From: Salpingoeca rosetta
Taxonomy: Eukaryota > Protista > Choanoflagellata
NCBI GenBank assembly: GCA_033442325.1
Contig: JAWQFM010000020.1
Location: 907,863 to 971,862 of the forward strand
Length of the DNA stretch: 64,000 nt
Direction: 5' to 3'
Each line of letters opens with the position of its first letter. The stretch's first letter is position 1. Of the stretch, positions 47,565 through 48,031 are shown one piece after another. A model generated the notes under the pieces. The model was not told the DNA's origin and ran no database searches. It saw only the letters and a program-made list of their open reading frames with translations. The translations under genes and the position numbers were made by a program.

Positions 47565-48031
47565 CTTGTGTGCCACCGGCCGCTGCTGGTGCTGTCTGGG
47601 TTGTTCTTCTTGTTACTGCTTCCTCTGCTTCCTGTGCTGTCAGTTGAATAGGTTGCGTCTGAGCGAGCACCCGGCCAAGTGTCTGGCTCTCTGCACCCGT
47701 GTGTTTGTGGGGGGGGGGGGCTGAAGGCCGAAGCAAGCACGCACTTGATGTATTGTTGGTTGAACGTTGTTCTGTGGTTCTTGGCAACAACAAACTGCTC
47801 TCGCTCGCGTCTTGGGTGTTGTTGTGCAGGAAACCTGCTGGCCAGCTGTTTCTGAGAAGATTTCGGGTATTATTCTACAGGTGGTTTGCCATATCTTCCG
47901 TAGAAACACCGCGCGCTTGGAAACCAAACAGCTCCGCCAAGATCGAGCGAGCAACAAGAGAGACACCAGCCAACAACACCTAACAGCGCACACACGCACA
48001 TACACAAGCGTCAGCTGGGGTGTGCGTGAGG
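47565..48031. promoter_or_regulatory. Putative bidirectional promoter of the dynein and IQUB genes, with RFX X-box-like motifs
   Basis: 467 bp separate the divergent ATGs. It contains TGGCAAC (47782-47788), a 14-mer GTTGTGCAGGAAAC (47821-47834) resembling GTTNNNNNGGNAAC, and TGGAAAC (47918-47924). The region lacks long dinucleotide microsatellites. Confidence 0.6.

What the first reader, a model, noticed from the sequence alone, without database searches (positions are those of the whole stretch)
47565..48031. Head-to-head DNAH12-like dynein and IQUB: two axonemal partners on one short shared promoter
Seen: the two start codons diverge only 467 bp apart. Established, as I recall from axoneme cryo-EM work: IQUB/FAP253 forms the base of radial spoke 1 where inner dynein arm a docks, and DNAH12 has been assigned to IDAa in mammals. 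Inference: this is an operon-like, co-regulated module encoding a motor and its docking partner. It would be a notable case of functional gene pairing in a unicellular holozoan.
Basis: partly seen in the sequence, partly recalled or inferred. Interest (0 to 1): 0.72.

Follow-up and report, generated by a model that had tools for sequence, protein, structure and literature searches.

The report
Ancient head-to-head DNAH12–IQUB gene pair
In the choanoflagellate Salpingoeca rosetta the gene for an inner-arm dynein motor (DNAH12 orthologue) and the gene for IQUB, which in mammals sits at the radial-spoke base beside that motor, start back-to-back 467 bp apart, and the same pairing is found in six bilaterian animals of five phyla, so it probably predates animals.

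Summary
The minus-strand ATG at 47564 and the plus-strand ATG at 48032 are 467 bp apart. Stranded RNA reads show divergent transcription, and splice junctions fit both start codons.

The genes are public S. rosetta models EGD76448 (dynein) and EGD76447 (IQUB). The dynein falls in the DNAH12/Dhc62B clade with 100/100 support, apart from the S. rosetta DNAH7 orthologue.

Within S. rosetta the arrangement looks ordinary. Published motif tables already list one RFX site (47780-47791) for both promoters. By my count about 57 other adjacent divergent pairs share an RFX site in the same way. In the published cRFXa knock-out IQUB falls 2.2-fold while the dynein does not change, so "operon-like co-regulation" is not shown.

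The new result is conservation. IQUB lies 5'-to-5' beside a DNAH12 orthologue, 1.5-2.4 kb away, in Saccoglossus, Ptychodera, Patiria, Branchiostoma, Magallana and Owenia. It does not in two anthozoans, Ciona, a bowfin or one unidentified protist.

The pair is therefore most likely an ancient microsyntenic unit. I found no paper describing it. Why it is kept is inferred, not shown.

The scan had noted this same stretch once before (s1-442155).

The parts
20574..47564 (-). Coding region of the axonemal inner-arm dynein heavy chain gene, the DNAH12/Dhc62B orthologue (public model EGD76448). It spans about 27 kb and has many exons.
   Evidence: Pfam dynein domains on exons. tblastn of full-length homologues P0006 and P0001 covers 41923 down to 20577. 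The stop codon follows ...ICQLDD at 20574-20576. 5' exons come from RNA junctions.
47556..47711 (-). Dynein exon 1: a 5' UTR of at least 147 nt plus the codons ATG-CCA-AAG. It is followed by intron 47334-47555.
   Evidence: An RNA contig in X4 covers 47556-47711. The junction 47333/47556 is seen in X21, X22 and X4. No upstream ATG is present.
47565..48031 (.). The 467-bp interval between the two start codons. It holds both 5' UTRs and a core promoter region of at most about 175 bp between the transcript 5' ends.
   Evidence: plus the annotated TSS offsets in File S7 of PMC10530576.
47780..47791 (.). A single RFX monomer site (CTTGGCAACAAC, core GTTGCCAA on the minus strand). It lies between the two transcript starts.
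   Evidence: Found. The same 12-mer is listed for EGD76448(+) at -228 and EGD76447(-) at -93 with HOMER score 12.30. The core 8-mer equals the validated spag6 site.
47873..49449 (+). IQUB exon 1: the 5' UTR from about 47873-47885, the ATG at 48032, then 472 codons of acidic low-complexity sequence.
   Evidence: Coverage starts in the 47800-47999 bin and runs at a depth of 60-150 through the exon. Contigs X4 and X8 span 48159-49449. No Pfam domain is found.
49759..50759 (+). IQUB exons 2-4: 49759-49907 (KPFLGG block), 50171-50257, and 50571-50759 (IQ motif).
   Evidence: Contig pieces join them to exon 1. tblastn with animal IQUB proteins matches them. Pfam IQ scores 18.6 bits.
51087..53754 (+). 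Further IQUB exons placed by homology: 51087-51140, 51612-51770, 52005-52100, 52348-52476, 52683-52781 and 53623-53754. They include the IQUB-like domain. The 3' end of the gene was not mapped.
   Evidence: Pfam PF25805 on two exon ORFs. tblastn with P0366 and P0291.

Best explanation
Two genes are transcribed away from each other out of one short promoter region. The DNAH12 orthologue runs on the minus strand and the IQUB orthologue on the plus strand. Their transcript 5' ends lie at most about 175 bp apart and flank a single RFX site.

The same 5'-to-5' DNAH12-IQUB adjacency exists in hemichordates, an echinoderm, amphioxus, an oyster and an annelid. The pair is therefore most likely one ancestral unit inherited from the common ancestor of choanoflagellates and animals. 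It was later broken in anthozoans, tunicates and vertebrates.

The most likely reason for its persistence (inferred) is that the two promoters overlap or share regulatory input in ciliated cells. A breakpoint between them would then damage expression of a motor (inner dynein arm a in mammals) or of IQUB, the radial-spoke-1 base protein it sits beside.

Shown: gene identities, divergent transcription, the shared RFX site, and conservation of the arrangement. Inferred: common ancestry of the S. rosetta and animal arrangements, that selection on shared regulation keeps it, and that the S. rosetta dynein is arm 'a'.
For: Start codons, splice junctions and strand-specific coverage come.

DNAH12 orthology:
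- The careful IQ-TREE tree puts the window gene in a 100/100 clade with Poecilia DNAH12 and beetle Dhc62B.
- The S. rosetta C21 gene sits in a 100/100 DNAH7 clade.
- PDB best hits are DNAH12 over DNAH7 over DNAH3 for two exons.

IQUB identity: Pfam IQUB domain and IQ motif. The closest human hit of EGD76447 is IQUB, and the protein was detected in S. rosetta cilia by mass spectrometry.

RFX: one site is listed for both promoters in published File S7.

Conservation:
- IQUB's upstream divergent neighbour is a 3985-4015-residue dynein heavy chain in Saccoglossus, Ptychodera, Patiria, Branchiostoma, Magallana and Owenia.
- The tail exons of these neighbours match fish DNAH12 better than any DNAH7 tested.
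- For Owenia and Magallana those exons hit human DNAH12 almost exclusively in the PDB.

Chance: IQUB's upstream divergent neighbour being this one gene out of roughly 11,600 (gene count from memory) is about 4e-5 (inference).

Functional link in mammals.
Against: In the published cRFXa knock-out only IQUB responds (logFC -1.11). The dynein does not (logFC +0.01, FDR 0.99).

I found no X-box above chance in the intergenic DNA of the six animals, so no conserved regulatory element is demonstrated.

Both anthozoans tested lack the pair. With equal event weights, independent origin in S. rosetta and in Bilateria is as parsimonious as retention.

No second choanoflagellate, sponge, ctenophore, placozoan or chytrid could be tested.

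Co-expression across conditions was not measured. Depth at the dynein 5' end in two RNA runs is 50-100 times lower than for IQUB. The published logCPM values are similar (7.19 versus 6.71), which suggests 3' bias in those runs.
Confidence: 0.55

Rival explanations
1. The pair is kept passively or for structural reasons, not for co-expression. The two core promoters are so close that almost any breakpoint between them would destroy one gene's promoter, so the pair survives in slowly rearranging genomes. The two genes are in fact regulated separately.
For: The response to cRFXa loss is discordant. No shared conserved motif appears in the animal intergenic regions. All positive animals belong to lineages known, from general knowledge, for slow genome rearrangement. 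The negatives include fast-evolving Ciona and a vertebrate. Mean intergenic distance in S. rosetta is only 885 bp (PMC12572184).
Against: Most short divergent pairs are not retained between unicellular holozoans and animals. PMC3514665 names HSPD1-HSPE1 as an exceptional case. The two products also meet at one place in the mammalian axoneme, which would be an odd coincidence for a purely passive survivor.
Confidence: 0.25
2. It is an ordinary neighbour coincidence in a compact genome. The S. rosetta pairing arose independently of the bilaterian one, by chance or by convergent selection, and has no special meaning in the choanoflagellate.
For: By my count about 57 adjacent divergent pairs share an RFX site in S. 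rosetta, including other dynein genes: DNAH3-like EGD83038/83037, DNAH1-like EGD80666/80667 and DNAH5-like EGD79206/79205. Divergent active TSS pairs are a major class of S. rosetta genes. Two anthozoans lack the pair.
Against: Both partners are the same orthologues in the same 5'-5' orientation in S. rosetta and in six animals. The chance expectation for this one pre-specified pair is about 4e-5 (inference).
Confidence: 0.12
3. It is a gene-model artefact: the acidic ORF at 48032 is a separate gene, or the dynein starts elsewhere, so the two axonemal genes do not really abut.
For: The first dynein coding exon has only three codons. The 472-codon acidic exon has no domain. Some Logan contigs leave the locus at 47596 and 47711.
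Against: RNA contigs splice the acidic exon to the IQUB-specific exons. RNA junctions fit the three-codon exon exactly, and the frame stays open. The stray contig ends map to other contigs, C2 and C9, and are chimeras. The published annotation agrees.
Confidence: 0.03

Closest known systems
Conserved ancestral microsyntenic pairs with bidirectional promoters, e.g. HSPD1-HSPE1 (PMC3514665)
   Same: The genes are in 5'-5' orientation with a short intergenic distance. The orientation is conserved across animal phyla and reaches a unicellular holozoan. The partners act in one complex.
   Different: The DNAH12-IQUB pair is not named in the text I could search, and that paper's supplement was not available. 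It is lost in vertebrates. Co-expression is not shown, and one perturbation in S. rosetta separates the two genes.
RFX-site-sharing divergent gene pairs of S. rosetta (File S7 of PMC10530576)
   Same: This pair is one of them. One 12-mer RFX site lies within about 100-230 bp of both annotated starts, as in about 57 pairs.
   Different: This is the only pair of the set whose conservation I examined, so how exceptional it is within the set is unknown. Its dynein partner does not respond to loss of cRFXa.
COL4A1-COL4A2-type head-to-head pairs conserved in animals (PMC12141075, seen only by title and abstract)
   Same: It is an ancient head-to-head pair whose products assemble into one structure.
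   Different: Those partners are paralogues arising from a duplication. DNAH12 and IQUB are unrelated proteins.
Bacterial operons
   Same: Functionally linked genes sit next to each other.
   Different: There are two separate, oppositely oriented mRNAs rather than a polycistronic transcript. The response to a regulator knock-out is unequal.

Membership tests
DNAH12 / Dhc62B orthologue group of single-headed inner-arm dynein heavy chains | Dynein heavy-chain architecture: linker (DHC_N2), AAA1-AAA6 ring, stalk and C-terminal domain | tested here: met
   Pfam DHC_N2, AAA_6, AAA_lid, AAA_7 and AAA_8 on exons. tblastn of P0006 residues 661-3977, stalk region included, maps collinearly onto 41923-20817.
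DNAH12 / Dhc62B orthologue group of single-headed inner-arm dynein heavy chains | Groups with DNAH12 rather than DNAH7 or DNAH3 in a phylogeny | tested here: met
   A 100/100 clade holds Poecilia DNAH12 and Leptinotarsa Dhc62B. A separate 100/100 DNAH7 clade holds the S. rosetta C21 gene. PDB scores run DNAH12 495/347, DNAH7 490/338, DNAH3 460/293 bits. No named DNAH3 sequence was in the tree.
DNAH12 / Dhc62B orthologue group of single-headed inner-arm dynein heavy chains | Occupies the inner dynein arm 'a' position next to radial spoke 1 | not testable with these tools
   Shown for human cilia only (PMC10266980). For S. rosetta it is an inference.
IQUB / FAP253 / CMUB116 (radial spoke 1 adapter) | IQUB-like domain (Pfam PF25805) | tested here: met
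   Two exon ORFs match profile positions 6-60 (24 bits) and 102-135 (39.4 bits, cut-off 27.8). The exons are collinear with animal IQUB.
IQUB / FAP253 / CMUB116 (radial spoke 1 adapter) | IQ calmodulin-binding motif | tested here: inconclusive
   Pfam IQ scores 18.6 bits, E 0.0015, just under the 20.3 cut-off. That is higher than in bona fide IQUB proteins P0291 and P0366 (14-15 bits).
IQUB / FAP253 / CMUB116 (radial spoke 1 adapter) | Ubiquitin-like domain upstream of the KPFLGG block | tested here: not met
   There is no Pfam hit in exon 1 or its last 172 residues even at E = 1. Saccoglossus IQUB scores 38 bits. Many database IQUB proteins likewise show only PF25805.
IQUB / FAP253 / CMUB116 (radial spoke 1 adapter) | Closest human relative is IQUB and the protein is present in cilia | tested here: met
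   Taken from published tables. EGD76447 carries IPR037695, its closest human hit is Q8NA54 (39.5% over 539 residues), and it is flagged as detected in S. rosetta cilia by mass spectrometry.
Conserved bidirectional (5'-5') microsyntenic gene pairs | Divergent orientation and short intergenic distance | tested here: met
   467 bp between ATGs, with transcript ends at most about 175 bp apart. The gap is 1.5-2.4 kb between called genes in six animals.
Conserved bidirectional (5'-5') microsyntenic gene pairs | The same orthologues in the same orientation across distant lineages | tested here: met
   Present in S. rosetta plus Hemichordata (2), Echinodermata, Cephalochordata, Mollusca and Annelida. 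The neighbours are DNAH12 orthologues. Absent in five other genomes.
Conserved bidirectional (5'-5') microsyntenic gene pairs | Correlated expression of the two genes | tested here: not met
   Only one perturbation was available. In the cRFXa knock-out, logFC is -1.11 for IQUB and +0.01 for the dynein. No time course or cell-type data were examined.
Conserved bidirectional (5'-5') microsyntenic gene pairs | A conserved regulatory element in the intergenic DNA | tested here: inconclusive
   An RFX monomer site is present in S. rosetta. No X-box better than shuffled controls appears in the six animals. Other motifs were not searched.

The most novel reading that the evidence does not exclude
DNAH12 and IQUB form a pre-metazoan bidirectional gene pair. 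It has been kept for more than 600 million years because the inner-arm 'a' motor and the radial-spoke-1 base protein it sits beside must be made together from one promoter region. That would make it a 'motor plus dock' unit of the axoneme written into gene order, and one of very few 5'-5' pairs shared by choanoflagellates and animals.
Probability: 0.35. Interest if true: 0.8.

Novelty: new member of a known kind. Interest (0 to 1): 0.64.

Why it matters
Gene order is almost fully scrambled between choanoflagellates and animals, so a 5'-5' pair that survives on both sides is rare. Here the partners are a specific inner-arm dynein and the spoke-base adapter whose loss lowers that dynein in mammalian sperm.

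If selection on shared regulation keeps them together, the pair gives a compact, genetically tractable handle. S. rosetta has CRISPR and reporter assays, so one can ask how cells match the supply of a given inner dynein arm to its docking site. The pair would also be a clean test case for why bidirectional promoters persist.

It also warns that, judged inside S. rosetta alone, the arrangement is unremarkable. The signal comes only from comparison between species.

Tried and rejected
- **Distal promoter.** Logan contigs leave the locus at 47596 and 47711. Both stray ends map to other contigs, C2 and C9, so they are chimeras.
- **Conserved X-box.** No strict X-box occurs in the S. rosetta interval. 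The best matches in the six animal intergenic regions are no better than shuffles.
- **Relative expression from read depth.** The dynein 5' end is 50-100 times lower than IQUB, but published logCPM values are similar. I treat the depth ratio as 3' bias and draw no conclusion from it.
- **PDB search of a dynein tail ORF (44433-44963).** No hit.
- **A Saccoglossus exon reference contained stops.** Stop-free exons of Owenia and Magallana were used instead.
- **Contig of P0010, an unnamed in-clade dynein.** It came without DNA and showed no IQUB gene upstream within 7 kb.
- **Metagenome scan with an IQUB exon.** It gave only transcript-sized contigs, useless for synteny. It did provide a full-length IQUB query, L044.
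- **Monosiga brevicollis.** Its DNAH12-like gene EDQ87505 is absent from the published RFX-motif instance table (File S7), and its identifiers are not positional. Adjacency could not be tested.
- **Irimia et al. supplement.** Not held. Literature searches for IQUB or DNAH12 with synteny, bidirectional or gene-pair terms found nothing relevant.
- **Two IQ-TREE runs failed on thread settings.** They were replaced.

Full report
**Organism and locus.**
The window is G000:C20:907863-971862. An earlier scan note called the genome Salpingoeca rosetta. I confirmed this: a paralogous dynein locus of G000 is 100% identical to the NCBI protein 'dynein heavy chain 7 [Salpingoeca rosetta]'.

**The observation.**
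The sequence has ATG on the minus strand at 47564-47562 and ATG on the plus strand at 48032-48034. The interval 47565-48031 is 467 bp.

I laid two stranded RNA-seq runs as raw reads (X21, X22) and two sets of RNA contigs (X4, X8) on 45000-50999.

Minus strand:
- GT..AG introns lie at 47334-47555, 46933-47234, 46615-46825, 45986-46145, 45687-45912, 45471-45615 and 45042-45292. Contig pieces imply one more at 46299-46496.
- The first intron begins exactly after ATG-CCA-AAG.
- Exon 1 reaches at least 47711.
- No other ATG lies on the minus strand between 47800 and 47565.
- The exon chain stays open for 269 codons.

Plus strand:
- Coverage starts in the 47800-47999 bin.
- The 472-codon acidic exon (48032-49449) is spliced to 49759-49907, 50171-50257 and 50571-50759.
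- No ATG lies between 47860 and 48031, and an in-frame stop precedes 48032.

Both start codons and the divergent transcription are therefore confirmed.

Contig ends that seemed to lead to a distal dynein promoter map to other contigs and are chimeras.

**How exons were searched.**
Exons were searched one by one by reference, and the joined step against databases was left out. Only in local scripts did I concatenate RNA-supported exons. The purposes were to test frame continuity, to build alignment blocks, and to run one local tblastn.

**What the genes are.**
Minus-strand exons carry Pfam DHC_N2, AAA_6, AAA lid, AAA_7 and AAA_8. Full-length homologues map collinearly from 41923 to 20577, and the stop codon lies at 20574-20576.

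G000 holds about a dozen dynein heavy-chain loci. I took four exon blocks (linker, AAA1, AAA3, AAA4), aligned each separately, then concatenated the alignments.
- A 97-row quick tree put the window gene in a clade with Poecilia DNAH12 and Leptinotarsa 'dynein heavy chain at 62B'.
- A 36-row careful IQ-TREE tree gave that clade 100/100 support.
- The S. rosetta C21 gene falls in a separate 100/100 clade with animal DNAH7.
- In both clades the choanoflagellate sequence is sister to the animal ones, as expected for orthologues that split before choanoflagellates and animals diverged.
- PDB best hits agree with smaller margins: DNAH12 495 and 348 bits, DNAH7 490 and 338, DNAH3 460 and 293.

Plus-strand exons carry the IQUB-like domain and an IQ motif at 18.6 bits. 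They are collinear with animal IQUB proteins. No ubiquitin-like domain is detectable. The N-terminus is instead 472 residues of acidic low-complexity sequence.

**What was already public.**
The supplements of Coyle et al. 2023 (PMC10530576) contain both genes under adjacent identifiers.
- EGD76448 is listed as the best S. rosetta hit of human DNAH12.
[quoted passage not shown] Its closest human hit is IQUB, and it is flagged as detected in cilia by mass spectrometry.
- File S7 lists one 12-mer RFX motif for both promoters, at -228 of EGD76448(+) and -93 of EGD76447(-).
- That motif is window 47780-47791. Its core equals the 8-mer whose mutation lowered spag6 promoter activity.
- The offsets place the annotated dynein start at the ATG and the IQUB TSS near 47873-47885.
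- With dynein exon 1 reaching at least 47711, the two transcript 5' ends are at most about 175 bp apart, with the RFX site between them.

**Is it special within S. rosetta? No.**
- Reading the whole S. rosetta sheet of File S7, I count 57 adjacent divergent pairs (EGDn+1(+)/EGDn(-)) that share one motif instance. That is about half of the 239 motif-bearing promoters.
- 24 of these pairs include a gene of the 201-gene conserved ciliome, and 3 have both genes in it.
- Other dynein genes are paired in the same way (EGD83038, EGD80666, EGD79206).
- A chromatin study reports a mean intergenic distance of 885 bp and whole gene clusters defined by a divergent active TSS directly upstream (PMC12572184).

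**Is it co-regulated? Not shown.**
In the cRFXa knock-out, EGD76447 falls (logFC -1.11, FDR 3.7e-10). EGD76448 is unchanged (logFC +0.01, FDR 0.99), the least responsive axonemal dynein in the rows of that table that I saw.

Read depth at the dynein 5' end is far lower than for IQUB. The published logCPM values are similar, so I attribute the difference to 3' bias.

**The functional link.**
- Walton et al. identified human IDAa as DNAH12 (PMC10266980).
- IQUB is the FAP253/CMUB116 orthologue and acts as an RS1 adapter said to contact the bases of IDAa and IDAb.
- Loss of IQUB lowers DNAH12 and DNAH7 in human and mouse sperm (PMC11755891).

**The new result: conservation.**
An IQUB exon found transcript-sized metagenome contigs. 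One full-length ORF (L044) retrieved named IQUB proteins from many animals. I then looked up the genomic context of eleven of them.

IQUB's upstream neighbour on the opposite strand is a 3985-4015-residue dynein heavy chain, 1.5-2.4 kb away, in:
- Saccoglossus kowalevskii
- Ptychodera flava
- Patiria miniata
- Branchiostoma
- Magallana gigas
- Owenia fusiformis

.

Evidence that these neighbours are DNAH12 orthologues:
- Their tail exons match fish DNAH12 better than any DNAH7 tested, including DNAH7 from closer phyla.
- The Owenia exon hits human DNAH12 at 96 bits and DNAH7 at 32 bits.
- The Magallana exon hits DNAH12 only, at 113 bits.

The pair is absent in Orbicella, Actinia, Ciona, Amia and an unidentified eukaryote. 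No dynein-like sequence lies within 10 kb of IQUB in any of these.

**Interpretation.**
IQUB's upstream divergent neighbour in S. rosetta is the one orthologue that holds that place in bilaterians. The chance of that, out of roughly 11,600 genes (gene count from memory), is about 4e-5 (inference). Retention from the choanozoan ancestor, with later breaks, is therefore the best reading.

Because both anthozoans lack the pair, independent origin is not excluded.

Why the pair is kept is inferred. Overlapping promoters or shared regulatory input is the most likely reason. However, the knock-out data and the lack of a conserved X-box in the animals leave room for passive or structural retention.

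I found no paper describing this pair. The microsynteny survey of Irimia et al. does not mention dyneins in its text, and its supplement was not available.

**Verdict.**
'Operon-like co-regulation' is unproven and partly contradicted. The arrangement is ordinary for S. rosetta but extraordinary in its conservation. It is a new member of the known class of ancient bidirectional gene pairs.

Noticed in passing
window 48032-49449: The S. rosetta IQUB orthologue begins with a 472-codon acidic, low-complexity exon. It has no detectable ubiquitin-like domain, although Saccoglossus IQUB has a clear one just upstream of the conserved KPFLGG block.
   Followed up: partly
window 48379: About 15% of RNA reads in two runs (13 of 86 and 15 of 94) read C where the genome has G. 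The contigs of two other studies show only G. This may be a strain polymorphism, heterogeneity or editing.
   Followed up: no
window 49052-49082: Many reads (33 and 27 in X22) and a 1355-nt contig (X8) match only about 30 nt here and continue into unrelated sequence. Another transcript shares this GAT-rich stretch with the acidic exon.
   Followed up: no
G000 loci L005-L011, L017-L019 (dynein AAA1 regions): Seven S. rosetta dynein heavy-chain genes, the window gene included, are interrupted at the same place, about position 66 of the Pfam AAA_6 profile. This suggests an old shared intron.
   Followed up: no
L027 (G000:C7:1248350-1258349): Another S. rosetta inner-arm dynein, about 71% identical in AAA1 to the window gene, is placed neither in the DNAH12 nor in the DNAH7 clade. 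It sits in an unresolved polytomy with a chytrid sequence. It may be the DNAH3-like gene or an older lineage.
   Followed up: partly
L050 (ENA ERZ25071824 contig, 22 kb): In an unidentified microbial eukaryote, an intronless IQUB gene lies downstream of a CFAP65-like fragment and upstream of polyketide or fatty-acid synthase fragments. No dynein is nearby.
   Followed up: partly
File S7 of PMC10530576: EGD81027/81026, EGD76427/76426, EGD74629/74628: Three other S. rosetta divergent neighbour pairs share an RFX site and have both members in the conserved ciliome. They are candidates for the same cross-species test.
   Followed up: no
window about 5560-5720 and about 11720-11800: Runs of N (assembly gaps) show up as X in the translations.
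   Followed up: no
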